A DNA stretch of 64,000 nucleotides from Macrostomum lignano (Eukaryota): assembly GCA_002269645.1 (NCBI GenBank), contig NIVC01001117.1, positions 45,670 through 109,669 on the forward strand, read 5' to 3'. The position numbers and the translations under genes were made by a program. Position 1 is the stretch's first letter. Each line of letters starts with the position of its first letter. This document shows positions 34,539 through 59,396 of the stretch, in pieces. The notes below the pieces were generated by a model, which was not told the DNA's origin, searched no databases, and saw nothing but the letters and a program-made list of their open reading frames with translations.

Positions 34539-34674
34539 TCCGTATAAAAAGTCTGCATCCGCATGCCACATAAGCCAGTAGTGAATGGCGTATCCTAGGT
34601 TACAGCTAATAAGAACTTCACGGCAATTTGAAAAGGCCAGTTTCCCTTTCCAAATTTGCAGCGGCTAACCAGCC

Positions 34675-38528: not shown

Positions 38529-41500
38529 CTATGGACGGAGGGTTGGCGCCGCCCAGGGAGGTCCACCAGTGTCGCCAGCAGCTATGGTGCTCTCTGGAAA
38601 GGAGAGTTCAGCCCTGCGGGTGGCCCGAAGGTAGCGCATGAGCTGATTAAAGTTTTCGGGTTTGCACGCTTCAGTAATAGATGTGTGTAGCCCGAGGTAA
38701 GTGAGTCTGGCCCGCGTGAAGGCGGGACAGATGCTGACGAAATGCTCAGCGGTTTCGTCACCTGAGTTGCAGAAACTACAGGTGGCGTTGGTGGCGTTGC
38801 CCTGCAGGTACTGGTGCCTGGAGAAGCAGCCGTGACCAGAGAGGGTCATGGTGGCAGCCCGGATGTCTCTGCGCGAGAGGCGCAAGAGGAGCTTCCGGAG
38901 CTGGTGAGAGGGCTGAGGGACAGCGCCTCTGGATTGCCTGCAGTTCGTGCGGTTCGCCCAAGTCGAGCGGTGCTGAGTCCTGATCCACGCTTTGATGCGC
39001 GAGTCGATGACACAGCCAGGAATCGGGACAAGAGGTTCGGGGCCGAGAGAGGAGCCGGAGGCACCAACTTTTGCAAGGGTGTCAGCCAACTCATTTCCTC
39101 GGATCCCCACATGCCCCGGAACCCACTTAAGGGTAATTTTGTTGGCGGAACCCAACACATTGAGGAGTTTGATACAGTCAAGGACTGTAGCAGAGTTGGT
39201 GCTGCAGCCACTGATGGCGTGCAAGGCAGCTTGGCTGTCCGAATGGAAAATGATGTTCTTACCAGTAACGCCAGTGGCGAGAAGCTCTGCAGTGCAGGAG
39301 CTGATGGCCAGAACTTCATTTTGGAAAACACTGGAGTTGACCCCAGTGTATTGAGCGTGGGTAGCGATGACCCTCCCGTTCAGAAAGATTCCAACACCAA
39401 AGCCGGTGTTGGCTGACTGCTTAGAACCGTCGGTGTAGCAATGAAGCTCACCAGGGTTCCAATGGTCATTGATGTTATCGCGCGAGTCGATAGCTACGGA
39501 GTAGCGCTGTCTCAGGTTGAGCGTTGAGGCAATGCCATCGGTGAAGACGCGATTGGCCTGACACTCGTTGAGAAAGTTGAGGCACAGATCGCTATGCGGG
39601 ACAAGGTTCCGCTTAGCAGGTGCTCTCATGTAAATGAATTTGACGCCGGCATCAATTAGACGCCGCGTCGTTCTAGCCGCCTCACCCCTGATGAAGAGGT
39701 CAAGAGGCGGAAGATTAAGAAAGGCCCCCATGCCAGCAAAGGGCGTGGACCTGGTGGCGTTGCAGATGAGCCTACACGCTCTGCCTTGGATCGTGTTGAG
39801 CAGGTCTGCATGGCTTTTGACCTGGGTAGCGCTAACCCAGACAACAGAGGCGTACGTAATGGCAGGTCTAACTACGGAAGTATAGATCCACCAAAGCCGC
39901 TTTGGGGATAGACCCCAAGAAGTGCCAAGTGCTCGTCGGAGCTGGGCCAGGATGGCTGAGGCACGCTTAGCTTTTGCTTTCACGTGGAAGGACCAGTTGA
40001 GCCGGTGGTCAAGTGTGACCCCGAGACATCTGGTCTGGTGCGCGAAGGCAATATCTCTGCCGTAGAGCTGCAGAGGACGTATGTTCCAGCGTAGTCTGCT
40101 GGTAAACATAATGGCAACGGTTTTGGGCTCAGAGAGTTCCAAACCATTGTCATTGGCCCAGGATTCTGCTTTGCGGATAAAGCTCTGCATCAGATCCCTG
40201 AGCGTGCTGGGAGACGGTCCTGCCACAATGGCCGTGACGTCATCAGCATACCCGACTTTGAAGACGGGGTCAGGTCGGGAGTCACTCAGAAGAGCGTCCA
40301 TGACCAGGTTCCAGAGCGTCGGGGTGAGGACTCCGCCTTGGGGTCCACCCTTACAGACTCTGGTGGAGGCAGTTTGCCCAAGAAGTTGGGCAGTGACCGT
40401 ACGGTTGGAGATCATGTACATGATCCACCGTATGAGGGTAGCATGAGCTTTGCGATTTTGAAGGGCCCTCTGAAACGCTTCAAAGATAACGTTGTCGAAG
40501 GCGCCAACAATGTCAAGAAAGAGAGCCAGGGCGTAACCGTCACCCAGTACCGCCCGTTCAATCTTTTCGACAATCGCATGCAGGGCGCTGTCAGTCGACC
40601 TCCCGGTACGGAAGGCGTGCTGATTATTGCTGAGGGGCATCGCTGTCAGCTCGCAGGAGAGCAGCCGCCAGAGAATAAGCCTCTCAGTGAGCTTAAGCAT
40701 TGCTGACGTTAAGCTAATTGGCCGGAAGGCCTTGACGCTTTGGTAGTCACCCTTCCCAGGTTTGGGAATAAAGACTACTCGAGCTTCAGTCCAGCTTTTG
40801 GGAACGTATCCCAGCTGGATAGAGGCCCGCATAAGATTGCGGGTGAGTCTCAGGAACGAGGGTATCTTGGCTGCTTCACGAAGGAGAACAGGGTAGATAC
40901 CATCAGGTCCAGGAGATTTGAAGGGTTTGAAGGTTCTGACCGCACGAGCGATTAGGTCTTCAGTGACAATGCCCGCCGCTAGGGTGGCTCCATCCATCGA
41001 ATGGTTGGGCTCCGGTCTAGCAGTAGGTACCCTCGGGAAGAATGTGCTAAGCATATGCTGAAGCACTTCTTCAGGGTCTTTAGTAAGAGAGCCATCATCT
41101 TTTTTGATCATGGCTAATTTGGACATTTTGTCCATTGTAAGGGCCTTGACAAGCCTAGAAGTAGGTCTGTCTTGATCCAATTCATTGCAGAATTGGCGCC
41201 ACTTACATTCCTTGGCCTTGCGCACTTCAGATTTGAAATTGCGGGAGGCTTGCCGGAAAAGCTCCATGTCCTCCGGGTTTCCGGTCTTCATGGCACGGCG
41301 ATGAAGGCTTTTGGCCTTCCGCCTGAGTTTCCCCAGCTCCGGGTTCCACCACGGCGCCGAGGTCTTGCCTCTGTAGGCGCGAGCAGGACAAGCCGCTTCG
41401 TAGGCTGCAATAATGCAACCTGTCAGCGTCTCAGCCATATGATCCACATCCTCGCAGGTCTCAATCGGACGTAAGTCCGTGAGTTCCTGCAGGTGCAGAT

Positions 41501-42269
41501 CAAGGGCAGCCTTGTAGGCCGCCCAATCAGTGTTGCGGATATTGCGTCTCCAAGTGATCGGAGACTGGGTTTTAGTGTCCGCGATATTAAAGGCAATAAA
41601 GCAGTGGTCAGACAGGGAGGGCTCCTCAGACCAGACTCTCCACTCCTTGACTCTGTCAAAGAGTCTTGGGGTAACGAGTGTGGCGTCGAGGACCTCGGTC
41701 CATCTGCCATTATTAAAGGTAGGAGTGCTGCCGCGGTTGCAGAGCATGAGGTTTGTGTTAGAGATGAGGGCCAGAAGCTCCTCTCCTCTAGTGTTGGTAT
41801 CTTTGCTGCCCCAGTGCTTGTGGTGCGCGTTGAGGTCGCCCCCTAAGCACAGCTCAGCGTTCTGGGACTCGCAGTACTGCGCAAGGCGCAGTAAACTCTC
41901 GGGAGCAGGGTCTCTGTCGCCTGGGATATAAACCGAGGCAACAAGACACGTACGCGGAGAGAAATGATTAGATTGGATGACGCAAAGGTCTCCATCAGAG
42001 AGATCAGTCCTCAGCCAAGCCTGGAGATGGCTAGCAGCGAGGATAGCCGCTCTAGGGCGGCTGTTCCCCGGGCCACACACATAAAAATCAGAGTAGCCAG
42101 AGGGAATGTTGGGCAACTTACCGTTGCGCATCCAGGGTTCCTGGATCAGGATGAGGCCTGGCCTGTACAGCTCAGCAATCTTCATCAGATTTACTGACGC
42201 AGATACGCAATGCTGTAAATTTATTTGCAGACAGAATGTCGCTCCTTTGGCAGCGTGGAGCTTAGTCAT
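38529..42269 (-). CDS. LINE ORF2: APE endonuclease, reverse transcriptase, RNase H, CCHC (1246 aa)
   Basis: QINLQH, IQEPW, GDLNAH, SDH (APE); FRPISL, PQGGVL, YADD (RT); YTDGSK, SDSQAAL, WVPGHVGIRGNELAD (RNase H); CSFC..ETAEHFVSIC. Confidence 0.97.
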   Translation of the reverse strand: MTKLHAAKGATFCLQINLQHCVSASVNLMKIAELYRPGLILIQEPWMRNGKLPNIPSGYSDFYVCGPGNSRPRAAILAASHLQAWLRTDLSDGDLCVIQSNHFSPRTCLVASVYIPGDRDPAPESLLRLAQYCESQNAELCLGGDLNAHHKHWGSKDTNTRGEELLALISNTNLMLCNRGSTPTFNNGRWTEVLDATLVTPRLFDRVKEWRVWSEEPSLSDHCFIAFNIADTKTQSPITWRRNIRNTDWAAYKAALDLHLQELTDLRPIETCEDVDHMAETLTGCIIAAYEAACPARAYRGKTSAPWWNPELGKLRRKAKSLHRRAMKTGNPEDMELFRQASRNFKSEVRKAKECKWRQFCNELDQDRPTSRLVKALTMDKMSKLAMIKKDDGSLTKDPEEVLQHMLSTFFPRVPTARPEPNHSMDGATLAAGIVTEDLIARAVRTFKPFKSPGPDGIYPVLLREAAKIPSFLRLTRNLMRASIQLGYVPKSWTEARVVFIPKPGKGDYQSVKAFRPISLTSAMLKLTERLILWRLLSCELTAMPLSNNQHAFRTGRSTDSALHAIVEKIERAVLGDGYALALFLDIVGAFDNVIFEAFQRALQNRKAHATLIRWIMYMISNRTVTAQLLGQTASTRVCKGGPQGGVLTPTLWNLVMDALLSDSRPDPVFKVGYADDVTAIVAGPSPSTLRDLMQSFIRKAESWANDNGLELSEPKTVAIMFTSRLRWNIRPLQLYGRDIAFAHQTRCLGVTLDHRLNWSFHVKAKAKRASAILAQLRRALGTSWGLSPKRLWWIYTSVVRPAITYASVVWVSATQVKSHADLLNTIQGRACRLICNATRSTPFAGMGAFLNLPPLDLFIRGEAARTTRRLIDAGVKFIYMRAPAKRNLVPHSDLCLNFLNECQANRVFTDGIASTLNLRQRYSVAIDSRDNINDHWNPGELHCYTDGSKQSANTGFGVGIFLNGRVIATHAQYTGVNSSVFQNEVLAISSCTAELLATGVTGKNIIFHSDSQAALHAISGCSTNSATVLDCIKLLNVLGSANKITLKWVPGHVGIRGNELADTLAKVGASGSSLGPEPLVPIPGCVIDSRIKAWIRTQHRSTWANRTNCRQSRGAVPQPSHQLRKLLLRLSRRDIRAATMTLSGHGCFSRHQYLQGNATNATCSFCNSGDETAEHFVSICPAFTRARLTYLGLHTSITEACKPENFNQLMRYLRATRRAELSFPESTIAAGDTGGPPWAAPTLRP

Positions 42270-43812
42270 ACTGTATTAAATGCAATATCTGGCTAGAGCC
42301 CAGGGCATCAAGGAGACTTGGACAACAGATCGTCCTCGTCCCAGGCCGCTGGGGCTTGACTGGGAGATGGGAGTTGGTCGACGTCCATGGCCTCCTCACC
42401 CCCACCGGCCCCCCAGCAGACTCCTCAGGCTCCGATGACAGGATGGAGGAAGCTTCCTCACCTGCATCTTTACCTTCAGACCCCACCAAGGTGGCCGAGG
42501 AGAGCTCGGATTCCGAAGACCCGGCCTCGTCCTCAACTCCTTCTCCGACTGGCAGGTTTGGTTCCCGGGGCTCGGCCGGAGCCGTTACCGCGGTCGCCGA
42601 ACTGCTGCTAGCAGAGGGGCGAGATGCAGCTTTGGCTTTGGGATCGGCTTGCGCCTTTCCTTGGGCCTTAGACTGCGCCCCGCTCTTGCCGGAGATGCCG
42701 GGGTTGGCAGTAGCCTTCCCTTTGGCAGACTTTCCTCGGCGCAACTTGAGCTTGAGGGCACCCAGCTGGAAAGAGGATCCATTAGGGTACCGACTCGCCC
42801 AAGTGCTGGAAAGGCCGAGGACAATTGAGTTGCCCGTCTCCCCCCTGCGGACTTTACGGTGATACACCAGTCCACTAGCAGGGAGGTCGGGGTTCAGACG
42901 CAGTAGGACCCGGCGAATAACGTCTGGTCCAGCTGCGGTGCTCTTAGCAGGGACGAAAACCACATAGGGTATCGTCTTTGGACGCTGGCCCTCGCGAAGA
43001 AAAAGAGCTCCGCCAAGGTCAGCATCCAAGGAGACCGTCGGTAGCCGCTGGAGCAGCCGCCGAGCGTCCTCCTCGCTGCTAGGAGCAATAAGAACGAATG
43101 TGCTTCGCAGCACCATCCGCTCAACGCCGATGGAGATTCCCTCCTCGACAGTCAGCTCAATCAGATAGGAGTCAACAGCACTCCACACTTTTTGAAGCTG
43201 ATCAGTGGTCCAGTCCTGGTCGCGACCTTGGATGATCACTCCCGGGATTTTGGCCTTGGCCTTCGCCGCAAAGGTAGCTCCCGAAGGAACCTCCTTGTTG
43301 GCAGTGGCCATTTGTTGCGCCGTGGTTTCGGCCTCAGCAGCCGCGGCAGCAGCTCCAGGGAGCGCCGCCGCTGAACTACTGGAGCTTCCACCGGCCGGCC
43401 CGCCTGGTTGCCTTGGGACTCCAGTCGCTTCAGCATCCATGGTGGACGCCGCCGCTTTGGCCCCCGCAGCTCCCTTCTTGGCCTGCCTTTTGGCGCGTTG
43501 TTTAGCGCGTTTGCGCTCAAGCCGAGCCCGCTGAGCTTCATCGGATCTGCCAGATTTGGCCGGTCCTTTAGGCTCAGAGCTCGCGGTTCCCTTAGATCCA
43601 CCAGCGGAGCTGGCAGGTCTTAGGGTATTTTGAGTTTGGTAGCTCTGGTCGGATCTGCCAGCAGAGCCAGCCGGTCCTTCCTTTGCCACAGTTGAATCAG
43701 TCGGTTGGGATCTGTCAGCAGGGCCGGCCGGTCCTTCGGACTGAGGTTGGGGTTTAGAAGGGTCCCCATCCCTAGAAATAGCTTGTTTATCCATAGTCGG
43801 CTCGAAGGCCAT
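42262..43812 (-). CDS. LINE ORF1 (gag-like, DUF4780-like core)
   Basis: Open frame upstream of ORF2; first ATG MAFEPTMDKQ near 43812; stop overlaps the ORF2 start (ATGACTAA). DUF4780 resemblance is from recall. Confidence 0.8.
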   Translation of the reverse strand: MAFEPTMDKQAISRDGDPSKPQPQSEGPAGPADRSQPTDSTVAKEGPAGSAGRSDQSYQTQNTLRPASSAGGSKGTASSEPKGPAKSGRSDEAQRARLERKRAKQRAKRQAKKGAAGAKAAASTMDAEATGVPRQPGGPAGGSSSSSAAALPGAAAAAAEAETTAQQMATANKEVPSGATFAAKAKAKIPGVIIQGRDQDWTTDQLQKVWSAVDSYLIELTVEEGISIGVERMVLRSTFVLIAPSSEEDARRLLQRLPTVSLDADLGGALFLREGQRPKTIPYVVFVPAKSTAAGPDVIRRVLLRLNPDLPASGLVYHRKVRRGETGNSIVLGLSSTWASRYPNGSSFQLGALKLKLRRGKSAKGKATANPGISGKSGAQSKAQGKAQADPKAKAASRPSASSSSATAVTAPAEPREPNLPVGEGVEDEAGSSESELSSATLVGSEGKDAGEEASSILSSEPEESAGGPVGVRRPWTSTNSHLPVKPQRPGTRTICCPSLLDALGSSQILHLIQYD

Positions 43813-44606
43813 GATAAAAGGTTGGTGGGCTACCCTCAAAGGGGCGCGGTACCCACCCGGCCGCTCCACCTGACCGGGCAGTAGGCCAATAGCACCCTCA
43901 AGGCTGGCCCGACACCAGGAGGGGGACCGCTTGCGACCGGACTACTCCCCGGCCTCCCAGCCCATCGGCACGGTCAACACCTTAGGCATTAGAGAGTACG
44001 TTGAGCAGTACCACGGCCTGCAGGTTGGCGAGCCAGACCCGCATACCCAAATTCGGCCGAAGCCACTGGATAGGGTCGCCAGCGCCGGAGCCCAGTCTGT
44101 CCAGCAGCCCTAGGGACTGCCTTGAACACACGCGGGGACGAGTACCCTGGGTCGACTTGCGAGACAGCGTGGGGGGGGGTCTGCGGCTGCCAGAGGCAAA
44201 TAGAGGGTGCAGACCTCCCACCAGCCTTGACCTGCTGAAGATAGGGGCAGGCGTGAAGCATCGCAGACCTTAGCCCATGGGCCTAGTCTGTCTCATACTT
44301 CACTGGCATGCTGAATACGCCTTCGCGTGCTATATCGCTGATTGTGTGCATAATTAGTCTCTAACTAAACAAAAATATACGGAATATTTACACCATTATT
44401 AGTTATGCTTGTAAATACATATTCATTGTAATAGTTTTGTCAATTTCAGTATCAAAAACCTTTTCTATCTACTGTTGAAAATTAAGTAGTGTATTGCCGA
44501 ATTCCTTCGTGTTTTTTTCTGTAAAAAATAGACTATATAAAAGCTCATACTTGCTACTTTGAAAAAAAAGTTGTGCAAATCGTTTTCTCGGTATTTTTTA
44601 TTACAG

Positions 44607-45059
44607 GAGACGAGACAAGCAATCCGCTGGCTACCAACGTTTCTGGCCTTTGTAGGCTTCTGGTATCTGCTCTGCCTCATTGTGGGCAGACGCGCCACCT
44701 ATAGTTTTGCCACCGTCTCCAGTCACCATGGCAACTATTCAGTTGTTTACATTACAACACCCTCATCTGACGAAGCCGAAAGTTTAGCTAGCGCTCTAGT
44801 GGCTAAAGAATTGGCCGCCTGCGTTAACGTGCTGCCCAGCGTCACCTCCGTGTACGGCTGGGAAGGTCAGGTGCGCAAGGATCCGGAATCGTTAATGATT
44901 GTAAAAACCCGGTTAGCTCTGTTGCCGGAACTGGCTGACTATGTTGCGTCAAATCATCCGTATAGTGTACCGGAAGTGCTGGCTGTTCCAGTGATTGGCG
45001 GCTTGTCAAAATACCTGGACTGGGTTCACAGGGCTACTGGCGGTCTGCGGCCCTCTTGA
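44607..45059 (+). CDS. CUTA: CutA divalent-cation tolerance family protein; exon lacks its own start codon
   Basis: VVYITTPS..LVAKELAACVNVLPSVTSVYGWEG..ESLMIVKT..HPYSVPEVLAVP..YLDWV; strong acceptor tttttattacag| at 44606, phase 0. Confidence 0.9.
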   Translation, partial: ETRQAIRWLPTFLAFVGFWYLLCLIVGRRATYSFATVSSHHGNYSVVYITTPSSDEAESLASALVAKELAACVNVLPSVTSVYGWEGQVRKDPESLMIVKTRLALLPELADYVASNHPYSVPEVLAVPVIGGLSKYLDWVHRATGGLRPS

Positions 45060-45334
45060 TTTTATGAGTGTGTACCCCACAGATAAAACAATAACTGGAT
45101 ATGTCACCCGCAAAAATGCATTTATCTACTCTTTGAGTAAGTTTTCAATCCTACAAGACTATTAAAGTTTTTTAAGCTGCAACGATCGTCTCTGGCTTTT
45201 TACAAGCAGACCCACTAAATTAGCATCTTCACCCTGGTTGAAGCTGCACCCAAATCTAGTGCGTGTTCACAGCGGGCAAGAGAGAAAAGTTGGTGGTGAC
45301 CCAGCCGGCCAGTCAGGCCGATAACCGGTTAGCT

Positions 45335-45470
45335 AATTTTGACCTCTCTCTTTACTACTCTCTCATTGGCTGAGCCAAATTGGGTCTGTCTCCCCAGGCT
45401 GAAGTTTCGTCCGTCTAACTTTTGCCTCTCTCCTTACTGCTCTCTCATTGGCTGAGCCAGATTGGGCCTC
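45335..45470. promoter_or_regulatory. Duplicated about 50-bp element containing inverted CCAAT boxes (ctcattggctgagcca..attggg)
   Basis: Two direct copies near 45338-45385 and 45419-45467; function unproven. Confidence 0.35.
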
Positions 45471-45879
45471 ATAAGTCACTTGTGTACACCGAGTTAAATG
45501 CTTGTTATTTATTCTCAACCCCATATGCTCCTGAGGCGCAAACCCCGGCCGAGTAAGGAAAGAACATTTTAGCTCCCACATTGAATTTAAGTGCCGCTGC
45601 GCAGACAAACTACTGAAAACAGAGTAGAGTTTTCACAACTTTAATTGCGAGTGCCATATATAGTTTTTTCCCTCTACGTGATGCCCCTAAGTTTTAACCG
45701 GTGACTTATTTTAATTTGTTCTCAATGCTTAATAGAGGATATTAGAAAATAGAGGAATTACTCATATTGAATGTATTGAATTACCTGTACCTATATATCT
45801 GCTATATACTCGTAGTAAATGTATAGCGCCTTTTCTGTAAGCGTCCTGTGCAAATAATACAATTCGAGAACTGTTTGTC

Positions 45880-46070
45880 ATGAAGGCGAGGACTAGGAAA
45901 CAGGTGACATGCCTGTTGGCTTCTCTTAGGTGTGTGTGTGGGTGGGTTCTTGTTTGCTAGATAATTCTTTTTCTCCCGTACCTATTCTCGAATTACTGTC
46001 GGTGTGCAAGTAGTGATATCAGATTCTTCTGTTGACCTGTCTGTATGTCTGTCTTTCTCTGTTCATCTTT

Positions 46071-46104
<34 letters not shown>

Positions 46105-48040
46105 CTTGTCTATCTGTTCTGTAAATGTGCCCAATTATCCTTAGTTAAATTTTACTTATCTCTTGCTGTCATTGTTCGGTTCTTTATGTCTGATTCCATG
46201 CAATCCAACAAGTTCAAGAAGTTTTAATTGCCAAAAGAAATATTACAGTAATACTTTCGTCTAAATTTCATTCTAAGAAAGTATGAAAATTTCGTAGTTA
46301 CTTTATTTTCATGTGCCTTTAAACAAGTTTAGTGCAACCCGACATTTAATATACCCACCTAATATAATGACTCGATTTGGATTGCAAATATTTTCTGCAT
46401 AAATATATGATACAAACACGGAAATTATTAATTTCATCTGGTTAGTCTATTGTCAAGTTAATTAATTTAATGCATTCTTAGTCAAACGCGTAAAGGATTT
46501 AGATTTAGTCAATATTCATTTAGGTTCGCCTATGGCGTGTCAATTCTACTTACATTATCAGGCGACGGACGTGTTGCTATGGGCAACGTACCTGTCACTC
46601 TAGTAATTCAGTTCATTTGAGTAGCTCTGTTTGTCTGTCTGTCACTGGAGCTGTTCTACAGTGTTGAATTGATTTAATAGAATGCGTTTCCATAGTAACA
46701 CATCCTGAACCTTACTCCTTATCCTGTCAGCTCCTGATCCTTACACTGCAAATCCTGTCAGTCAGCTCCTGATCCTTTCACCGCAAATCCTGTCAGTCAG
46801 CTCCTGATCCTTTCACTGCAAATCCTGTCAGTCAGCTCCTAATCCTTTCACTGCAAATCCTGTCAGCTCCTGATCCTTTCACTGCAAATCCTGTCAGTCA
46901 GCTCCTGATCCTTACACTGCAAATCCTGACAGTCAGCTCCTGATCCTCACACTGCAAATCCTGTCAGCTCCTGATCCTTACACTGCAAATCCTGGCAGTC
47001 AGCTCCTGATCCTCACACTGCAAATCCTGTCAGCTCCTGATCCTTACACTGCAAATCCTGTCAGTCAGCTCCTGATCGTCACACTGCAAATCCTGTCGGC
47101 TCCTGATCCTTACACTGCAAATCGTGACAGTCAGCTCCTGATCCTTACACTGCAAATCCTGACAGTCAGCTCCTGATCCTTACACTGCAAATCCTGTCAG
47201 TCAGCTCCTGATCCTTACACTGCAAATCCTGACAGTCAGCTCCTGATCCTTACACTGCAAATCCTGACAGTCAGCTCCTGATCCTTACACTGCAAATCCT
47301 GACAGTCAGCTCCTGATCCTTACACTGCAAATCCTGACAGTCAGCTCCTGATCCTTACACTGCAAATCCTGTCAGCTCCTGATCCTTACACTGCAAATCC
47401 TGTCAGCTCCTGATCCTTACACTGCAAATCCTGTCAGCTCCTTTCATCACAGAGCCTGTAAGCTATCATCGCAGAGTCTGTAAGCTTTCATCGCAGAGTC
47501 TGTAAGCTTTCATCGCAGAGCCTATTAGCTATCACCTTTCATCCCGAACCCTTCACCACACAGGCCTCATCCGGTAACCGCCGCAGCCGACTCTGCCAAG
47601 TCAACAACAACAACAGCATCGCCAGCACCAACAACCAGAGCTACTCTTATTCAGCTCTCCAAGTGGTGGATGATCTCAATCACAGCCGCAGTTCTGAGAC
47701 CGGCTCGGGCGGCGCTGTCCCGGCCAGCGGCCCGCTGCTCAGCCTGATGTTCACCTTCGACATCAACTTGGAGCACGCCGTTTTTGTATTGCACGCCTGT
47801 CACGGTGTTCTAGCCGAGGCGCTGTTCGTGCTGGCGTCTGGCGGCGCCCTTCGCTCCACGGGCCTGCCGGTCTGGACTCCTCAAGACGATGCCGACGTTT
47901 TGAGCTGCGACATTGAAAGAATGCGCCGGGTGCGAGATCGGTTCGGACGGGTTGACGTCTGTCTGCGCCTTATTTACCTCGGCGACTGCGGCTGGCCTGA
48001 GCCCGACCGCGACCCGCCTGAGCTGGCACTCTGCTGCTGA
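45880..48040 (+). CDS. Small protein with Rap1/TERF2IP C-terminal (RCT, Rap1_C) domain; about 166 aa
   Basis: Terminal exon 47564-48040 (acceptor cacacag|, phase 0) encodes LMFTFDINLEH..GVLAEALFVLASG..GLPVWTPQDDADVL..RFG..V..RL, matching recalled human RAP1 LMEKFNLDL..GELEATSAFLASG..GYPIWSRQDDIDL..KFG..VARR. First exon 45880-45903 (MKARTRKQ|gtgaca) is tentative. Confidence 0.7.
46720..47440. repeat. 31/35-bp minisatellite (gtcagctcctgatccttacactgcaaatcct[gaca]) in the RCT-gene intron
   Basis: Direct reading. Confidence 0.95.
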
Positions 48041-48059
48041 CTGATGCTGTTGCAAAACT

Positions 48060-48460
48060 CCGTGCCTGTCACTCCGTGTCGGTCACTCTCTACACACCGT
48101 GTCTGTCACTCCGTGTTGGTTACTTCGTGTCGCTCACACCCCAGTCACCTAAGTCCGTCACTCTCCAGTCACGTCGTGTTGGTCACTCCGTGTCGGTCAC
48201 TCCGTGTCGGTCACTCCCCAGTCATCCGTGTCCGTCACTCCGTGTCAGTCACTCTGTCGGTCAGTCCCCAGTCACCCGAGTCCGTCACTCCAGTCACTCA
48301 GTGTCAGTCACTCTGTGTCAGTCACTCCCCAGTCACCCGAGTCCCGCCCGGAACTCCTCAATCACTTCCTAGTCACTTCGTGTATATCATTAACCAGTCA
48401 CTCCGTGTCCGTCACTCTCCAGTCACTCCCTAGTCACTCCGTGTCAGACACTCGTTTGGA
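48060..48460. repeat. Degenerate gtcactccgtgtc low-complexity repeat
   Basis: Direct reading. Confidence 0.8.
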
Positions 48461-48987
48461 GTGACGCTGATAGACTGACGCGGTTGGAGTGACATATTAT
48501 GAAAGGTTATGCAGGAGTGACAAAGACCAAATGTGAGGACATTTAATTTGGTAAATGCTTTATTACTTCAAAAGCGCATTTTTAAACTCGGGTTTTGTAC
48601 TAGTGTACTAGTATTCTGCATTTTGTTTAGTTTATTAATAAATAGATATTTGAGTCACAGTTTGGAAATTTAATTTTCAATTTTCAATTTTGTTAACAAG
48701 AAAAAGTAGCCATGTTTTTTTTTCAAATTTGAGTCCGTTTCTCATTGACACGGTAGAAATCATTGAATAGTAATAAATAGTTTTATAGGTCAATTAACTG
48801 CATAAAAGACTGTATTTAATGTGTCAATTATTAGCTTATTATTATTAATAATATTTTATTTTTATTCATCATTTAATGTTGAAAGAAAAATTAAAACTGG
48901 GTGATGCAATAAAAAGTGACTTTACAGTGCTACTGCTCAGCTATGTCTCAAGAATATTTGTTAGAAACTGTTAAGGGGCTTGTCCTG

Positions 48988-49718
48988 TTGCTGGCGCCCC
49001 TGGTGCTGGCGCCCCTGGTGCTGGCGCCCCTGGTGCTGGCGCCCCTGGTGCTGGCGCCCCTGGTGCTGGCGCCCCTGGTGCTGGCGCCCCTGGTGCTGGC
49101 GCCCCTGGTGCTGGCGCCCCTGGTGCTGGCGCCCCTGGTGCTGGCGCCCCTGGTGCTGGCGCCCCTGGTGCTGGCGCCCCTGGTGCTGGCGCCCCTGGTG
49201 CTGGCGCCCCTGGTGCTGGCGCCCCTGGTGCTGGCGCCCCTTGGTGCTGGTGCCCCTGGTGCTGGCGCCCCTGGTGCTGGCGCCCCTAGTGCTGGTGCCC
49301 CTGTTGCTGGCGCCCCTGTTGCTAAAGCCCCTGGTGCTAAAGCCCCTGGTGCTGGCGCCCCTGGTGCTGGCGCCCCTGTTGCTGGCGCCCCTGGTGCTGG
49401 CGCCCCTGGTGCTGGCGCCCCTGGTGCTGGCGCCCCTGGTGCTGGCGCCCCTGGTGCTGGCGCCCCTGGTGCTGGCGCCCCTGGTGCTGGCGCCCCTGTT
49501 GCTGGCGCCCCTGGTGCTGGCGCCCCTGGTGCTGGCGCCCCTGGTGCTGGCGCCCCTGGTGCTGGCGCCCCTGGTGCTGGTGCCCCTGGTGCTGGCGCCC
49601 CTGGTGCTGGCGCCCCTAGTGCTGGTGCCCCTGTTGCTAAAGCCCCTGGTGCTAAAGCCCCTGGTGCTAAAGCCCCTGGTGCTAAAGCCCCTGGTGCTAA
49701 AGCCCCTGGTGCTGGCGC
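48988..49718. repeat. 15-bp GC-rich minisatellite (gctggcgcccctggt) with a 1-nt insertion near 49241
   Basis: About 48 units. Confidence 0.95.
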
Positions 49719-49835: not shown

Positions 49836-52800
49836 TTAGGCCGCCTTGTTCACTGCGGCAGTAGCTTCCACCAGCTCCGTGCTGTCAGCTCGGCCAGCAG
49901 CGTGGCATTTAGCGGATCGGATGTTGAACCCTATCGCGATTAGGCCAACGAGTAGTTCTACGAATTCCAGCATGGTTAGGACGGAGGCTCCGACCCAGAG
50001 ACCTGGCGAGGCAGAATTAGTTATTCAACCAAGTGTAGTTGATGCTAAATTAGTTTACCAGACTGTCCCTGAACGGGCACGAAAGGTATGCACAGCAACC
50101 TTGACGTTCTCTGTCATGCACTGCCTTGGATAATCGCACGACAAGCATCGGGCCAATTTTGTGTTTCGATTGTGTTCTTTGACCACAGCCAACACTGTAC
50201 ATATCCCCGACCAACTGTGCATAACCCCAACCCACTGTACATATCCTCAACCAACTGTACATGTCCCCAACCAACTGTACATGTCCCCAACCAACTGTAC
50301 ATATCCCCAACCAACTGTACATATCCCCGACCAACTGTGCATAACCCCAACCCACTGTACATATCCTCAACCAACTGTACATGTCCCCAACCAACTGTAC
50401 ATGTCCCCAACCAACTGTACATATCCCCAACCAACTGTACATATCCCCGACCAACTGTGCATAACCCCAACCCACTGTACATATCCTCAACCAACTGTAC
50501 ATGTCCCCAACCAACTGTACATATCCCCAACCAACTGTACATATCCCCAAACAACTGTACATGTCCCCAACCAACTGTACATATCCCCAACCAACTGTAC
50601 ATATCCCCGACCAACTGTGCATAACCCCAACCCACTGTACATATCCTCAACCAACTGTACATGTCCCCAACCAACTGTACATATCCCCAACCAACTGTAC
50701 ATATCCTTAACCAACTGTACATGTCCCCAACCAACTGTACATATCCCCAACCAACTGTACATATCCTCAACCAATTGTACATATCCCCAACCAACTGTAC
50801 ATATCCTCAACCAACTGTACATGTCCCCAACCAACTGTACATATCCTCAACCAACTGTACATATCCCCAACCAACTTCCCGGCCTGGTCAGCTCACCAAT
50901 CACTCCGCCAGCCTCAGACAGGAAGCTCTCAATGGATATTGCCAGTCCTCCTCGAACAGGGTAACCCTAGAGGACAGGAAGTAGATGTTGGCTTGAACCA
51001 CGTGGTCGCTGGCCGATATACCGCTGAGCATCTTGCCGCCTGCTGAGCTGACGTTGATCAGCGCTGGAATGAAGGACCGGTCGGGCGCCCTCTGCCAGGT
51101 CTGCAGCAGCAGTCGCTCAACGTCGCCGGTCCACTGACTGCCAGCAGTGCCGCCGCTGCCCGCAGAGGTTGTTGGCAGAGCCGTTGTGGCGGCGTGGGCC
51201 ACAATGCCCTCCTCTTTGCAGGCCTTCTGACAGGCGGACACCAGCCGTCCGTAGACTGTCAGATCGTCGTTAAATCGTAGCTGATTGTCGACGCAAGCTT
51301 TGTCCAGCATCATCCGGTCGAAGGAGTTGATCCGCGGCGGCGCCCCGGCCAGTCGGGTGAAATTCAACCGGCTGCAGCGTCTGTCCCGCTGCAGCGGCAG
51401 CGGAATCGGCAGGTTGTCCGTGACGCAGCCGCAGGCGGTTTTGATCGCCGAGTTCAACGCCATGTCGACGCAGTTCACCGTGTCGTAGTCGTAGTTCTCG
51501 GAGGAGCCGTCAAAGTTGACAGCCTGATGGTGCTTGGTGCACGGGTCGTTGATGGTGGTCATCCGTTTGGTGCGCTCGACCATCAGGCCGATGTCCGTGC
51601 GGTGGCCAGCGGGCGCCGGCACTGGCGCCGCCCGAAAGAAGTTGGTGAACTTGTCGTAAGGGGTCAGCAGGAAGGCGTAGCCCCGAGTGTACCGTGTCGA
51701 GGTGCTGAAGTAGCTGTCCTTCAGGCCTTCGTAGGCCAGCGTGAGGGTCAGGCCGTTGTCGTAGCCGCCGTAGGCCTGCGGGCGGTTCGCAAGGCCTATG
51801 AAGATGGGGCGCCCTCTGTATCAAATTGAGGCGCTATCTACGAAATCATCATCTACGAAAATGAGACTTCATCTAATAAAATGAGGCGCCATCTAAAAAA
51901 ATATGACTTCATCTAGTAAAGTGAGGCGCCATGTAGTAAAATCAGGCGCCATCTACGAAAATGAGGCGTCATCTAGTAAAATGAGGAATCCATCTACGAA
52001 AATGAAGCGCCATCTACGAAAATGAGGCGCCATCCAGTAAAATGAGTTGCCATCTACGAAAATGAGACACCATCTAGTAAAATGAGGCGCCATCTATGAA
52101 AATGTGACTTCATCTAATAAAATGAGGCGCCATCTAGTAAAATCAGGCGCCATCCAGTAAAATGAGGCGCTACCTACGAAAATGAGGCGCCATCTAGTAA
52201 AATAAGGCGCCAGCTACGAAATTGAGGCGCTATCTATGAAAATGAGATGCCATCTACGAAAATGAGGCGCCATCTAATAAAATGAGGCGCCATCTAGTAA
52301 AATGAGTCACCGTCTATGAAAATAAGGCGCACTCTGTATGAAAATAGACATCATCGATGCAAATGACGCGCCAGACAAAAACTTGACGCAGCCCAGTATG
52401 AAATGGCTCAGTCGAGACGCAAAGGGAAATCTCAATATTTCATAAATAATTATTGTTACAATATAAACTTATGCACTTAAAACAAACTTTGGTCCGGGCT
52501 CTGGACCAGCTGAAACCAACTGAACAAAAAAATTTGCTCAAATAGCTCCCTGCTCAACGATCAATATGGTACGATATAGCTAGCCTAGATCCTGAGCTAC
52601 ACCTGTGTTTGCAGCAGGGGTTTTGAATACACAAACGGGCTGCAGTTGACTTTCGTCATGACTCTGCATTATCCCTATGGATTAATGAGAATTTCTAACG
52701 ATGAGCGCTTTTTCAATGTGTGGGAGATTTTCTGAGACAGGAAATCTTTTCTCGTTTAAATTTGACTATCGGTGTATTCGGAATGCTGATGCTATGGAAT

Positions 52801-54201
52801 GGCTATGGTAGGGAAAATGAGCTGTGGTGATGCTGAAAATGAGTCAGGGTTAGATGCATGAGTACTGAAAATGAGTCAGGGTAGATGATAACTGAAAATG
52901 AGTCAGGGTAGATGATAACTGAAAATGAGTCAGCTAGGGTAGATGATAACTGAAAATGAGTCAGCTAGGGTAGATGATAACTGAAAATGAGTCAGGGTAG
53001 ATGATAACTGAAAATGAGTCAGAGTAGATGATAACTGAAAATGAGTCAGGGTAGATGATAACTGAAAATGAGTCAGGGTAGATGATAACTGAAAATGAGT
53101 CAGGGTAGATGATAACTGAAAATGAGTCAGGGTAGATGATAACTGAAAATGAGTCAGGGTAGATGATAACTGAAAATGAGTCAGGGTAGATGATAACTGA
53201 AAATGAGTCAGGGTAGATGATAACTGAAAATGAGTCAGAGTAGATGATAACTGAAAATGAGTCAGGGTAGATGATAACTGAAAATGAGTCAGGGTAGATG
53301 ATAACTGAAAATGAGTCAGGGTAGATGATAACTGAAAATGAGTCAGGGTAGATGATAACTGAAAATGAGTCAGGGTAGATGATAACTGAAAATGAGTCAG
53401 GGTAGATGATAACTGAAAATGAGTCAGAGTAGATGATACTAAAAATAAGTCACACCGATGATACTGAGAATGAGTCATGGTAATGACAAATGAACCACTT
53501 TACGCCAAAAAGTGAGTCACAGTGACACCAAACATCAGTCAATCTACCAGCAGCCCCCTCTGACACCCTTGAGAACTGCTCAGCTCACCCAGGCGCTGGA
53601 TCCAGTCGCGCTCGAACACAAATCAGATGCCGTACCGATCCGAGGCCACCGCAGTGAAATTCGCCGCGCTGCACGAGCGCCAGTTGAAGCTGCAGGTGAG
53701 CATCACCGAGTCCAGAGCGGTGGTCACATTGGCCAGCTCTGGCAGACGGCCCTCCAGGTAGGCGTCCAGCAGAGCCTTGTCCGCCACCGCCTCTCGACGA
53801 TCTTCTTCGGCTACGCCAAAATACGGCGAGGTCAAGTTGAACAGCTGATTGTGCAGGTCGCGCACTACCCAGTTACCCGGCTGGGTCATCAGGTAGCTGG
53901 AAAAGTAGCTGGTGGGACAGATGGCCACTTTGGGAAAGTGCAGCGGCTCCAGCACGTTGTTGGTGATCACCCGCTTCTGGTAGGCGAAGTACTTGACTGA
54001 GATCAGGGCCAGGTGGTAGGACAGGCCGCAGATAGCTCCAGTGAGCAGCAGGGACCACAAAATGGTTTTGATTCTGGACTCAGACTCGGCCACATTCTTG
54101 TATCCGTGACCGCTGGTTGACGTGGCGAACTGCAGCACCCGAAGTTTGGCCCGTTTCACCTTCAACTCTGCGCTGGAGCTGTCCGGCCCGGCTTGCGACA
54201 T
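49836..54201 (-). CDS. DEG/ENaC (amiloride-sensitive) sodium channel, about 565 aa if repaired; disrupted as sequenced
   Basis: Exons (-): 54201-53589, 51813-50897, 50002-49836. Motifs FATSTSGHG (HG), TM1, FPKVAICP, CSFNWRSC, RYGI*FVF, GLTLTL, ESFLSEAGGVIGLWVGASVLTMLEFVE (GAS filter, TM2). Lesions: TGA at 53625-53623, -1 frameshift near 50934, intron 1 needs a GAG acceptor. Confidence 0.9.
50190..50880. repeat. 20-bp minisatellite (ccaactgtacatatccccaa), DEG/ENaC intron 2
   Basis: Direct reading. Confidence 0.95.
51825..52330. repeat. Degenerate 20-bp minisatellite (catctacgaaaatgaggcgc), DEG/ENaC intron 1
   Basis: Direct reading. Confidence 0.9.
52860..53430. repeat. 27-bp minisatellite (gagtcagggtagatgataactgaaaat), DEG/ENaC intron 1
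   Basis: About 21 units. Confidence 0.95.
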
Positions 54202-58788: not shown

Positions 58789-59276
58789 CCTTCCGTTCGA
58801 TCCGGGCCGTCGTCCAGTCCGAAGAGCGCCAGAGGGCTCGGCTGTGGCAGGCGGTGGTCGAAACCGTCCTAATCTACAACGCCGAGACGTGGACGCTGAC
58901 GGCTACGCTGGAGCGGCAGCTGGACTCGGCGCACTCAGGGCTGCTCCGTGCGGCCTTTCGAGCTGACGAGAGTGTCGGGACGAGGCCCTGCACGATCTGC
59001 AGCAGCGCCCGTCCATCATCCTGCGCCGGCGGCGACTTCAACTGGCGGGCCACGTGATCCGGGCCGAGGGCTACTGCCCCCAACCTGTTCAGGACGTCCT
59101 GCTGCTCACCCTGCAGGGCCCGCTCAGGCGGCGGGTCAGGCCCAAACCCATCGATACGTGGACTGCCTCCTACGCGACGCCGGGGCGCCTGACACCGCCA
59201 AAGGCGCGGACTTCGTTCGCTCTCAGGTTCTGCGACGCGCCCTGCTCTGTGAATTTGCTTGCGGGGCTGCGTAATT
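58789..59276 (+). mobile_element. 5'-truncated RTE-clade LINE 3' fragment with (TTG)n tail
   Basis: LWQAVVETVLIYNAETWTLT..LD..LLRAA and RRRRLQLAGHVIR across frameshifts; TSD caagtgggg at 58780-58788 and 63906-63914. Confidence 0.85.
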
Positions 59277-59326
59277 TGTTGTTTTTGTTGTTGTTGTTGT
59301 TGTTGTTTTTGTTGTTGTTGTTTTGT

Positions 59327-59395
<69 letters not shown>
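59277..59395. repeat. (TTG)n tract, left flank of the Ingi-like element
   Basis: Direct reading. Confidence 0.95.

Positions 59396-59396
<1 letters not shown>

What the first reader, a model, noticed from the sequence alone, without database searches (positions are those of the whole stretch)
45880..48040. RCT-only mini-Rap1: a shelterin-like domain without BRCT or Myb
Seen: 47732-47985 encodes a segment aligning over about 80 aa with the recalled human RAP1/TERF2IP C-terminus (shared LM..F, G.L, LASG, G.P.W..QDD.D, FG..V..R). Only about 60 low-complexity Asn/Ser residues precede it, and I found no BRCT or Myb exon between CUTA and this exon. Established: the RCT binds TRF2 (vertebrates), Taz1 (fission yeast) and Sir/Rif proteins (budding yeast); Rap1 is not recognised in Drosophila or C. 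elegans. Inference: a minimal Rap1 adaptor, or a dominant-negative-like paralogue, pointing to a reduced or rewired telomere complex in this lineage.
Basis: partly seen in the sequence, partly recalled or inferred. Interest (0 to 1): 0.72.

Follow-up and report, generated by a model that had tools for sequence, protein, structure and literature searches.

The report
Flatworm Rap1 tail domain standing alone
A flatworm (Macrostomum lignano) gene encodes a roughly 159-residue protein that consists of little more than the partner-binding C-terminal domain of the telomere protein Rap1, without the BRCT and Myb domains found in other animal Rap1 proteins; whether it acts at telomeres has not been tested.

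Summary
Window 47564-48040 (+) is a single coding exon. [quoted passage not shown]
- Pfam Rap1_C: E 1.3e-4, 22.4 bits, just under the 24.2-bit cut-off.
- Human RAP1 RCT (PDB 3k6g): E 4.5e-4.
- Profile-profile comparison with mammalian RCTs: 97% probability.
- AlphaFold model: six helices, and the top seven PDB fold matches are all Rap1 RCT structures.

The window is Macrostomum lignano. Two near-identical copies are annotated from RNA-seq as separate short genes, named only "hypothetical protein". They are the last gene of a unit that runs HD-domain gene, PPOX, CutA, RCT.

No BRCT or Myb domain was found in the 2.5 kb upstream or in the other plus-strand ORFs of the window.

The one distant relative found among 1.8 billion proteins is also a stand-alone RCT protein of 110 aa. 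It passes the Pfam cut-off.

The exon has no in-frame ATG before the domain. The start codon most likely comes from the flatworm spliced leader, which ends in ATG and would be in frame at the acceptor 47563|47564.

The RCT-only architecture is supported. A telomeric role, and the absence of a full-length Rap1 elsewhere in the genome, could not be tested. I rate it a new variant of a known kind, of moderate interest.

The parts
47562..47563 (+). AG splice acceptor (cacacag|GCC), proposed site of spliced-leader trans-splicing. It is in phase 0 with the ORF.
   Evidence: Sequence. The annotated paralogue P0005 begins with ASSGNRR, exactly at this junction. The M. lignano SL ends in ATG (PMC8629364). 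The site has CAG but not the full [T/C]TNCAG motif.
47564..48040 (+). Single coding exon of the RCT-only protein: 158 codons plus TGA, or 159 aa with an SL-donated Met.
   Evidence: ORF and translation. It is 98% identical to NCBI PAA64053.1 and PAA46522.1 of M. lignano. GC at codon positions 1/2/3 is 0.63/0.49/0.73, like the neighbouring PPOX gene, against about 0.42 in intergenic DNA.
47564..47725 (+). Low-complexity Asn/Ser-rich N-terminal region, predicted disordered, with no in-frame ATG.
   Evidence: Translation. pLDDT is below 50. All amino-acid differences between the three M. lignano copies, and one in-frame codon indel, fall here. The region is not conserved in P0004.
47726..47986 (+). 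Rap1 C-terminal (RCT) domain, predicted to have six helices.
   Evidence: Pfam Rap1_C at E 1.3e-4. Human RAP1 RCT 3k6g at E 4.5e-4. hhalign against mammalian RCTs gives 97.1% probability and E 5e-11. The AF2 model has pLDDT 87-94 and helices at residues 12-22, 26-35, 40-49, 63-70, 74-84 and 86-98 of 47693-48037. The top seven Foldseek hits are all Rap1 RCT structures. There are 0 differences in 321 nt between the three copies.
47987..48037 (+). Pro/Asp-rich C-terminal tail ending in ...LALCC, predicted disordered.
   Evidence: Translation. pLDDT is below 50. The tail is identical in the three M. lignano copies and absent from P0004.
46721..47534 (+). Tandem repeat arrays (35/66-bp units, then 22-bp units) filling the presumed outron or intron just upstream of the acceptor. 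They are not coding.
   Evidence: Tandem Repeats Finder. Copy number differs between the window and L001. No Pfam domain in any plus-strand frame.
45880..45903 (+). Rival 5' end: a candidate 8-codon first exon (MKARTRKQ) followed by GTGACA.
   Evidence: Enumeration of phase-0 ATG-to-GT exons. It is conserved in L001 and L002, which differ from the window by only a few percent, so this says little. It adds no domain. A second candidate at 45819-45836 (MYSAFS|GTAAGC) has a better donor.
44607..45059 (+). CutA gene, the previous gene of the same annotated transcriptional unit. Its acceptor is attacag|GAG at 44600-44606.
   Evidence: Pfam CutA1 at E 1e-34. Gene names are Mlig010534.g3 and Mlig011821.g6. 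It has no genomic ATG. One copy (L002) reads CATG where the others read ACAG.
48637..48642 (+). First AATAAA downstream of the stop codon. It is a possible poly(A) signal, after a repeat-rich 3' UTR.
   Evidence: Sequence only. Not verified.

Best explanation
The window comes from the flatworm Macrostomum lignano. Positions 47564-48040 (+) are a single-exon gene for a protein of about 159 residues. The protein has a disordered Asn/Ser-rich N-terminal stretch of about 55-58 residues, a six-helix Rap1 C-terminal (RCT) domain, and a short Pro/Asp/Cys tail. It has no BRCT domain and no Myb domain.

The gene is the last member of an annotated polycistronic transcriptional unit: HD-domain gene, PPOX, CutA, RCT. 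Its mRNA is most likely made by spliced-leader trans-splicing at the AG at 47562-47563. The leader's 3'-terminal AUG lands in frame and serves as the start codon (M-ASSGNRR...).

By analogy with every RCT studied, the domain would act as a protein-protein adaptor that clasps a short helical Rap1-binding motif in a partner. The expected partner is a TRF2/Taz1-like double-strand telomere-binding protein. That would make this a natural "C-terminal-only" Rap1.

Shown:
- The domain identity.
- The short stand-alone ORF in three M. lignano copies and in one distant relative.
- The absence of BRCT and Myb domains nearby.
- The gene's membership of the transcriptional unit.

Inferred:
- The trans-splice site and the use of the SL AUG.
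- The partner, and any telomeric role.
For: Domain identity:
- Pfam Rap1_C at E 1.3e-4 over 77 of 84 profile positions.
- Only human RAP1 is found in the PDB by sequence.
- The sole remote relative, P0004, matches the window protein at E 4.3e-4 in a library of 1.84 billion proteins. P0004 itself passes the Pfam cut-off (30 bits against 24.2).
- hhalign of the flatworm pair against mammalian RCTs gives 97.1% probability and E 5e-11 over 82 columns.
- The AF2 model from a 10-row alignment has mean pLDDT 79.8 and six helices.
- Foldseek ranks human 3k6g and then yeast 4bjt, 3owt, 4bj5 and 3cz6 as hits 1-7. The yeast sequences were not in the alignment.

Real gene:
- NCBI PAA64053.1 and PAA46522.1 come from an RNA-seq-based annotation (PMC5730564).
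- The GC3 pattern is coding-like from 47564 onward, but not in the open frame upstream of the acceptor.
- The window and L001 show 0 substitutions in 321 nt of the domain, against 1.5% in intergenic DNA and 6 in 156 nt of the N-terminal region.

RCT-only architecture:
- No BRCT or Myb domain in 45060-47600.
- None in other plus-strand ORFs.
- None with a RAP1 HMM on all six frames.
- P0004 is a 110-aa ORF with its own ATG, lying between other genes on a 2.3-kb contig.

SL-donated AUG:
- The SL is CGGTCTCTTACTGCGAAGACTCAATTTATTGCATG (PMC8629364).
- A terminal ATG is a feature of all reported flatworm SLs and can provide a start codon (PMC12582326, which cites Cheng et al. 2006 for it).
- The HD-domain and CutA genes of the same unit also lack a genomic ATG and have phase-0 acceptors. 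In one copy of each, CATG replaces NCAG at exactly that spot.
- Gene names show one transcriptional unit.

Precedent for function: in S. pombe the Rap1 N-terminal region 1-456, which holds the BRCT and Myb domains, is dispensable for telomere length control, end protection and silencing (PMC3487762).
Against: - The window's own Pfam score is below the gathering cut-off.
- The AF2 alignment was built mostly from mammalian RCTs, so the model is not independent. The Foldseek TM-scores are low (0.37-0.46, rmsd about 7 A).
- The acceptor cacacag lacks the T-rich [T/C]TNCAG motif found at 44% of M. lignano SL sites.
- CutA and the acceptor are 2.5 kb apart. Even without the repeats this exceeds the 1-kb operon criterion of PMC8629364.
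- The N-termini of the "partial" annotated proteins are not reliably at acceptors. P0001 starts 27 nt downstream, CutA 30 nt downstream, and PPOX 6 nt after its own ATG. The match of P0005 to the junction is therefore weak evidence.
- No RNA reads were examined.
- No search of the M. lignano proteome for BRCT/Myb Rap1 or TRF proteins was possible. The one human RAP1 search listed only mammals.
Confidence: 0.6

Rival explanations
1. Extra paralogue or gene-fission product. M. lignano also has a canonical BRCT-Myb(-RCT) Rap1, or a separate BRCT-Myb gene, elsewhere in the genome. This short protein would then be an additional RCT-only regulator, for example a competitor for the same partner motif, rather than the lineage's only Rap1.
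For: Myler et al. state that the BRCT and Myb domains are found in all metazoans (PMC8653790), so complete loss would be unusual. M. lignano is a hidden polyploid (PMC10468722 abstract). Nothing here tested the rest of the genome.
Against: The exhaustive HMMER search with the RCT found no second M. lignano RCT-bearing protein, although that library does contain M. lignano proteins such as P0001. A profile of the two flatworm RCTs again found only P0001 and P0004. Neither search could detect a BRCT-Myb protein that lacks an RCT or has a very divergent one.
Confidence: 0.25
2. Ordinary Rap1 with a mis-modelled 5' end. The RCT exon would be the last exon of a larger gene whose BRCT and Myb exons lie further upstream and were missed.
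For: The exon has no ATG of its own. The acceptor could be a cis-splice acceptor. Phase-0 mini-exons can be drawn upstream at 45819-45836 and 45880-45903. The annotated proteins are flagged as partial.
Against: The 2.5 kb back to CutA holds no BRCT or Myb match in any plus-strand frame. Further upstream on the same strand lie three unrelated genes and, in this copy only, a retrotransposon. No other plus-strand ORF of the window matches BRCT or Myb. RNA-seq-based models in two copies are single-exon. The distant relative P0004 has its own ATG and sits 550 nt after the previous ORF's stop. The drawable mini-exons add only 6-8 residues.
Confidence: 0.08
3. Chance resemblance. The domain would be an unrelated small helical bundle, for example UBA-like, and not an RCT homologue.
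For: The single-sequence scores are marginal (22-23 bits). Foldseek TM-scores are low, and UBA domains appear further down the list. Single-sequence AF2 failed, with pLDDT 37.
Against: Two independent family members hit the same Pfam model end to end, and one is above the cut-off. hhalign gives E 5e-11. Rap1 RCT structures from human and yeast fill the top seven fold matches. Nothing else in Pfam or the PDB matches, even at E up to 10.
Confidence: 0.04
4. Decaying remnant. The exon would be a leftover of a lost Rap1 gene that is transcribed only as part of a read-through unit and is not translated.
For: It has no start codon of its own, repeats flank it on both sides, and the current annotation of a third assembly appears not to call it. 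The protein cluster has only two members.
Against: The reading frame is intact in three copies. The only indel is an in-frame codon. The domain shows 0 differences in 321 nt while flanking DNA differs by 1.5%. GC3 is coding-like. A relative with 38-45% identity keeps an intact ORF and a recognisable domain. Two other genes of the unit show the same lack of a genomic ATG.
Confidence: 0.05

Closest known systems
Human RAP1/TERF2IP RCT domain (PDB 3k6g, in complex with the TRF2 Rap1-binding motif)
   Same: It is the best sequence and fold match. Identity is 28% over about 80-85 residues, with the same six-helix layout and shared motifs (LM..F, G.L, LASG, P.W..QDD.D, FG..V..R).
   Different: Human RAP1 is 399 aa, with an N-terminal BRCT domain, a central Myb domain and an acidic linker before the RCT. 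The flatworm protein has only about 58 low-complexity residues before the RCT, plus a 17-residue Pro/Asp/Cys tail after it. Binding to a TRF2-like partner was not tested.
S. pombe Rap1 C-terminal fragment (residues 457-693), an experimental truncation
   Same: It is a Rap1 that lacks the BRCT and Myb domains but keeps the RCT, which binds Taz1. It is sufficient for telomere length control, end protection and silencing (PMC3487762). This is the nearest functional analogue of a "mini-Rap1".
   Different: It is a laboratory construct, not a natural gene. It also carries the Poz1-binding and Bqt1/2-binding regions, and no counterpart of these is recognisable in the 58-residue flatworm N-terminus.
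S. cerevisiae Rap1 RCT (PDB 3owt, 4bjt, 4bj5, 3cz6)
   Same: These are Foldseek hits 3-7. The domain is the same kind of helical module that clasps short helices, here from Sir3, Rif1 and Rif2.
   Different: It is larger (about 150 residues), is only 18-19% identical, and is attached to a BRCT domain and two DNA-binding Myb domains.
P0004, an unnamed 110-aa protein from a Logan assembly of SRR24765318 (locus L003 780-1112)
   Same: It is the only true relative found, at 38-45% identity. It is a stand-alone RCT ORF in a compact, operon-like setting, and it is preceded by a Ser/Thr-rich stretch that is in frame with an upstream acceptor.
   Different: It has its own ATG, a Gly/Ser insertion between helices 3 and 4, and no Pro/Asp/Cys tail. 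Its neighbouring genes are different. The source organism is unknown.

Membership tests
Rap1/TERF2IP orthologue (canonical BRCT-Myb-RCT protein) | N-terminal BRCT domain (Pfam PF16589) | tested here: not met
   Absent from the ORF. Absent from all plus-strand frames of 45060-47600 and from the other plus-strand ORFs of at least 50 aa. Absent with a mammalian RAP1 HMM run on all six frames. The rest of the genome was not searched.
Rap1/TERF2IP orthologue (canonical BRCT-Myb-RCT protein) | Central Rap1-type Myb domain (Pfam PF08914) | tested here: not met
   Same searches as for BRCT. No match.
Rap1/TERF2IP orthologue (canonical BRCT-Myb-RCT protein) | C-terminal RCT domain (Pfam PF11626) | tested here: met
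   22.4 bits and E 1.3e-4 for the window protein, which is just under the 24.2-bit cut-off. Its relative P0004 scores 30 bits, above the cut-off. hhalign gives 97.1% probability. PDB sequence and fold searches return only Rap1 RCTs at the top.
Rap1/TERF2IP orthologue (canonical BRCT-Myb-RCT protein) | Recruitment to telomeres through a TRF2/Taz1-type partner that carries a Rap1-binding motif | not testable with these tools
   No access to the M. lignano proteome to find a TRF homologue, and no binding or localisation data.
Rap1_C (RCT) domain family | Six-helix bundle fold | tested here: inconclusive
   The AF2 model shows six helices with pLDDT 87-94 in the domain, and the top seven Foldseek hits are RCTs. 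However, the alignment was dominated by mammalian RCTs, TM-scores are only 0.37-0.46, and the single-sequence model failed.
SL trans-spliced downstream gene of a flatworm polycistronic unit | Same-strand upstream genes in one annotated transcriptional unit | tested here: met
   The gene names are Mlig010534.g2, g3 and g4, and Mlig011821.g4, g5, g6 and g7, for HD, PPOX, CutA and RCT. The meaning of the naming scheme is given in PMC5730564.
SL trans-spliced downstream gene of a flatworm polycistronic unit | SL-junction reads at an AG acceptor, with the [T/C]TNCAG motif and a short intercistronic distance | tested here: inconclusive
   An AG acceptor in phase 0 is present, and P0005 starts exactly there. 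The motif is only CAG. The distance to CutA is 2.5 kb, of which about 0.9 kb is tandem repeat. No reads were available.

The most novel reading that the evidence does not exclude
Macrostomid flatworms have reduced Rap1 to a free-standing RCT adaptor of about 110-160 residues. In M. lignano it is translated from a start codon donated by the spliced leader. This protein would be the lineage's only Rap1. It would be a natural counterpart of the N-terminally truncated S. pombe Rap1 that still performs the main telomere functions. That would imply that the BRCT and Myb domains, which have been described as present in all metazoans, have been lost or moved to another protein in a regenerating animal.
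Probability: 0.35. Interest if true: 0.72.

Novelty: new variant of a known kind. Interest (0 to 1): 0.55.

Why it matters
The most recent survey of metazoan shelterin describes the Rap1 BRCT and Myb domains as present in all metazoans and treats the RCT as the less conserved part (PMC8653790). Here the opposite arrangement appears. The RCT is kept as an independent small protein in at least two divergent species, and it is annotated only as "hypothetical protein".

If it is the only Rap1 of these flatworms, it shows which part of Rap1 is indispensable in an animal. M. lignano is a transgenic, RNAi-amenable model in which to study what an RCT does on its own.

The locus also gives a clear example of three genes of one polycistronic unit that all depend on the spliced leader's AUG for initiation. 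This explains why ATG-requiring gene finders would miss such genes.

Tried and rejected
- Single-sequence AlphaFold of the 158-aa protein gave pLDDT 37 and was unusable.
- The exhaustive HMMER hits P0002 (636 aa) and P0003 (1263 aa) are internally repetitive proteins whose scores add up over 8-9 repeats. I rejected them as spurious.
- Searching with full-length human RAP1 was meant to harvest invertebrate Rap1s.
- A profile of the two flatworm RCTs found nothing new.
- The ORF just downstream of the RCT gene in L003 (1245-1736) has tryptophan spacing that looked Myb-like. Pfam, the PDB and the RAP1 HMM give no support, so I dropped the idea.
- I tried to identify the organism behind SRR24765318 from the literature and from the M. 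cliftonense/M. hystrix paper, without success.
- Literature searches for shelterin or Rap1 in flatworms returned nothing relevant.
- I considered using the N-termini of the "partial" NCBI proteins as markers of trans-splice sites. They sit 0-30 nt downstream of acceptors, or of a genuine ATG, so they are not reliable.
Full report
**What is in the sequence**

The frame that ends at the TGA at 48038-48040 is open from 47462. From 47564 it reads ASSGNRRSRLCQVNNNNSIASTNNQSYSYSALQVVDDLNHSRSSETGSGGAVPASG. A block follows that aligns with the C-terminus of human RAP1.
- Pfam gives one family at E up to 10, Rap1_C (PF11626). It scores E 1.3e-4 and 22.4 bits and covers profile positions 7-83 of 84. This is slightly below the curated 24.2-bit cut-off.
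- phmmer against all PDB sequences returns only human RAP1. 3k6g_A scores E 4.5e-4 and 8rd4_D scores E 6.4e-3, over query 59-138, which is window 47738-47977.
- A mammalian full-length RAP1 HMM, run without filters on all 2115 six-frame ORFs of the window and three related loci, hit only this ORF and its two M. lignano copies (E about 4e-5). The hit was confined to the RCT part of the model.

**Organism and existing annotation**

The exon is 98% identical to a Macrostomum lignano "hypothetical protein", BOX15_Mlig010534g4 (PAA64053.1, 150 aa, partial). The same 90% cluster holds BOX15_Mlig011821g7 (PAA46522.1, 159 aa, partial). Neither carries a precomputed Pfam domain, so the RCT identity is not annotated.

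Both contigs show the same plus-strand order: HD-domain gene, PPOX-like amine oxidase, CutA, RCT gene. The gene names (g2, g3, g4 and g4, g5, g6, g7 of one Mlig number) place them in one "transcriptional unit". In the Mlig_3_7 annotation such a unit is an RNA-seq-assembled precursor that is cut into genes at trans-splice and poly(A) signals (PMC5730564).

The window is a third copy of this locus. It differs by a 5.3-kb non-LTR retrotransposon on the minus strand between PPOX and CutA.

**Is it really an RCT?**

An exhaustive HMMER scan of 1.84 billion representative proteins found one true relative besides the M. lignano cluster. This is P0004, 110 aa, from a Logan assembly of SRR24765318. It scored E 4.3e-4 for the whole library and 45% identity. 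Two other hits are repetitive proteins and were rejected.
- P0004 passes the Pfam Rap1_C cut-off on its own: 30 bits, E 5.6e-7, profile positions 4-83.
- A profile of the two flatworm sequences, compared with a profile of seven mammalian RCTs, gives 97.1% probability and E 5e-11 over 82 columns.
- AlphaFold2 on the sequence alone failed, with pLDDT 37.
- With a 10-row alignment (window, P0001, P0004 and seven mammalian RCTs), AlphaFold2 gave mean pLDDT 79.8, with 87-94 across the domain, and six helices. This matches the six-helix bundle described for RCTs (PMC8653790).
- Foldseek against the PDB ranks human 3k6g first (E 4.4e-4). Yeast Rap1 RCT complexes 4bjt, 3owt, 4bj5 and 3cz6 follow, down to rank 7. 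UBA-like three-helix domains appear only after that.

There are caveats. The alignment is dominated by mammalian RCTs. The TM-scores are low (0.37-0.46). I therefore treat the fold result as supportive, not independent. Taken together, I put the homology at about 0.9.

**Is it a working gene?**
- GC at codon positions 1/2/3 is 0.63/0.49/0.73 in the ORF. The neighbouring PPOX gene shows 0.69/0.56/0.74, and intergenic DNA about 0.42. The open frame upstream of 47564 shows no such pattern.
- Between the window and L001, substitutions are 1.5% in unique intergenic DNA and 6 in 156 nt of the low-complexity N-terminal part, plus one in-frame codon indel. There are 0 in 321 nt of the RCT part. At the intergenic rate about five would be expected in the RCT part.
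- P0004 retains an intact ORF and a recognisable domain at 38-45% identity.

**Is it RCT-only?**
- Pfam finds no BRCT or Myb domain in any plus-strand frame of 45060-47600. This stretch is AT-rich unique DNA plus tandem arrays at 46037-46122, 46721-47437 and 47444-47534.
- Pfam finds none in 104 other non-repetitive plus-strand ORFs of at least 50 aa across the window.
- The RAP1 HMM finds none on either strand.
- The RNA-seq-based CDS in both annotated copies is a single contiguous block.
- In L003 the relative has its own ATG at 780. The previous ORF on the contig stops at 150, and the next ORF starts 133 nt after the RCT stop codon.

This makes an upstream BRCT-Myb part of the same polypeptide unlikely, at about 0.1. 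It says nothing about a separate Rap1-type gene elsewhere. All three word-indexed protein searches and the single exhaustive search are spent, and none could address this point.

**Where translation starts**

The first in-frame ATG is Met62 at 47747, inside helix 1, so the start codon must come from outside the exon.
- The exon is preceded by cacacag|GCC, with the AG at 47562-47563 in phase 0.
- The M. lignano spliced leader is CGGTCTCTTACTGCGAAGACTCAATTTATTGCATG (PMC8629364).
- A 3'-terminal ATG is common to all reported flatworm SLs and can provide a start codon (PMC12582326, which cites Cheng et al. 2006 for it).
- Trans-splicing at this acceptor would give M-ASSGNRR..., a 159-aa protein. 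PAA46522.1 begins exactly with ASSGNRR.

The same logic holds for two other genes of the unit. The HD gene (ccttcag|TCT in L001) and CutA (attacag|GAG in the window and L001) have phase-0 acceptors and no genomic ATG. In one copy of each, the four bases before the exon read CATG instead of TCAG or ACAG. Mlig_3_7 was polished with Pilon using RNA-seq reads. These are therefore probably scars left by SL-bearing reads, which would mark genuine SL sites.

Several points weigh against this model.
- The RCT acceptor lacks the [T/C]TNCAG motif seen at 44% of SL sites.
- It shows no such scar in any of the three copies.
- It lies 2.5 kb from CutA.
- The other "partial" N-termini of this annotation fall 6-30 nt inside their genes, so the coincidence for PAA46522.1 is weak evidence.

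Alternative phase-0 first exons can be drawn at 45819-45836 (MYSAFS|GTAAGC) and at 45880-45903 (MKARTRKQ|GTGACA). Either would add only 6-8 residues and no domain. I give the SL-AUG model about 0.65.

**How it most likely works**

Every characterised RCT is a protein-protein module that clasps a short helical motif of a partner. The known partners are TRF2 in vertebrates, Taz1 in fission yeast, and Sir3, Rif1 and Rif2 in budding yeast. These appear in the PDB entries and in PMC8653790.

In S. pombe, Rap1 lacking residues 1-456, which include the BRCT and Myb domains, still supports telomere length control, end protection and silencing. The C-terminal part with the Taz1-binding RCT is required (PMC3487762).

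The best-supported inference is therefore an adaptor that docks on a TRF-like telomere-binding protein. Its disordered N-terminus or Cys-ending tail might carry a second short interaction or targeting motif. This is inference from family knowledge. Nothing here tests binding, localisation or phenotype. I put a telomeric adaptor role at about 0.45.

**Comparison and novelty**

The protein meets the RCT criterion of the Rap1 family. It fails the BRCT and Myb criteria, so it should not be filed as a canonical Rap1 orthologue. It is an RCT-domain protein that plausibly works like the C-terminal half of Rap1.

I found no description of flatworm Rap1 or shelterin, or of a natural stand-alone RCT protein, in the searchable literature. 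That library is incomplete.

I rate it a new variant of a known kind. Interest is moderate (0.55). It would rise to about 0.7 if genome-wide searches show that this is the lineage's only Rap1.

Noticed in passing
window 32793-32796 against L001 2243-2246; L002 6576-6579 against window 44603-44606: At the splice acceptors of the HD-domain gene and of CutA, one copy of the locus reads CATG where the other copies read TCAG or ACAG. CATG is the 3' end of the spliced leader. The Mlig_3_7 assembly was Pilon-polished with RNA-seq reads, so these look like polishing scars from SL-bearing reads. They turn an acceptor into a false genomic ATG, and they also mark true trans-splice sites.
   Followed up: partly
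window 38532-43869 (minus strand): An apparently intact non-LTR retrotransposon. ORF1 is 535 aa. ORF2 is 1246 aa with endonuclease, reverse transcriptase and RNase H domains. It lies antisense between PPOX and CutA in this copy only, and is absent from L001 and L002. It therefore sits inside the annotated polycistronic unit.
   Followed up: partly
window 59226-63023 (minus strand): A second non-LTR element whose endonuclease and reverse-transcriptase parts are split over several ORFs. It is probably degraded by frameshifts.
   Followed up: no
window 47987-48037: The RCT protein ends in ...PPELALCC. The two terminal cysteines are identical in all three M. lignano copies and absent from the distant relative. 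This could be a lipidation or metal-binding site, but that is pure speculation.
   Followed up: no
L003 1245-1736 (+): A gene starts 133 nt after the stop codon of the stand-alone RCT gene, preceded by a tctttcag acceptor, so the layout looks operon-like. It encodes a Pro/Ser-rich protein with a tryptophan-spaced segment (VWPLRER...TWPTISRRLAKF...TWCSARSCAQQY) that looked Myb-like. No Pfam, PDB or RAP1-HMM match was found.
   Followed up: partly
window 22671-23480 (-), 50903-51622 and 53626-54201 (-), about 3820-5020 (+): Other genes in the window: a claudin/PMP22-family protein; two exons of an amiloride-sensitive sodium channel (ASC); and ORFs with an activin-receptor-type ectodomain (E 6e-4) followed by a transmembrane-like segment.
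   Followed up: no
window 34662-34677: Unlike its neighbours, PPOX has its own ATG, 13 nt after the likely acceptor (tttgcag|CGG). An in-frame TAA lies just upstream of it. The SL AUG would be out of frame here and would open a short overlapping upstream reading frame.
   Followed up: no
whole window: Tandem repeat arrays are very dense, with 12- to 77-bp units and often several hundred bases per array. They create many long spurious ORFs on both strands, including directly upstream (46721-47534) and downstream (48057-48330, 48984-49718) of the RCT gene.
   Followed up: partly
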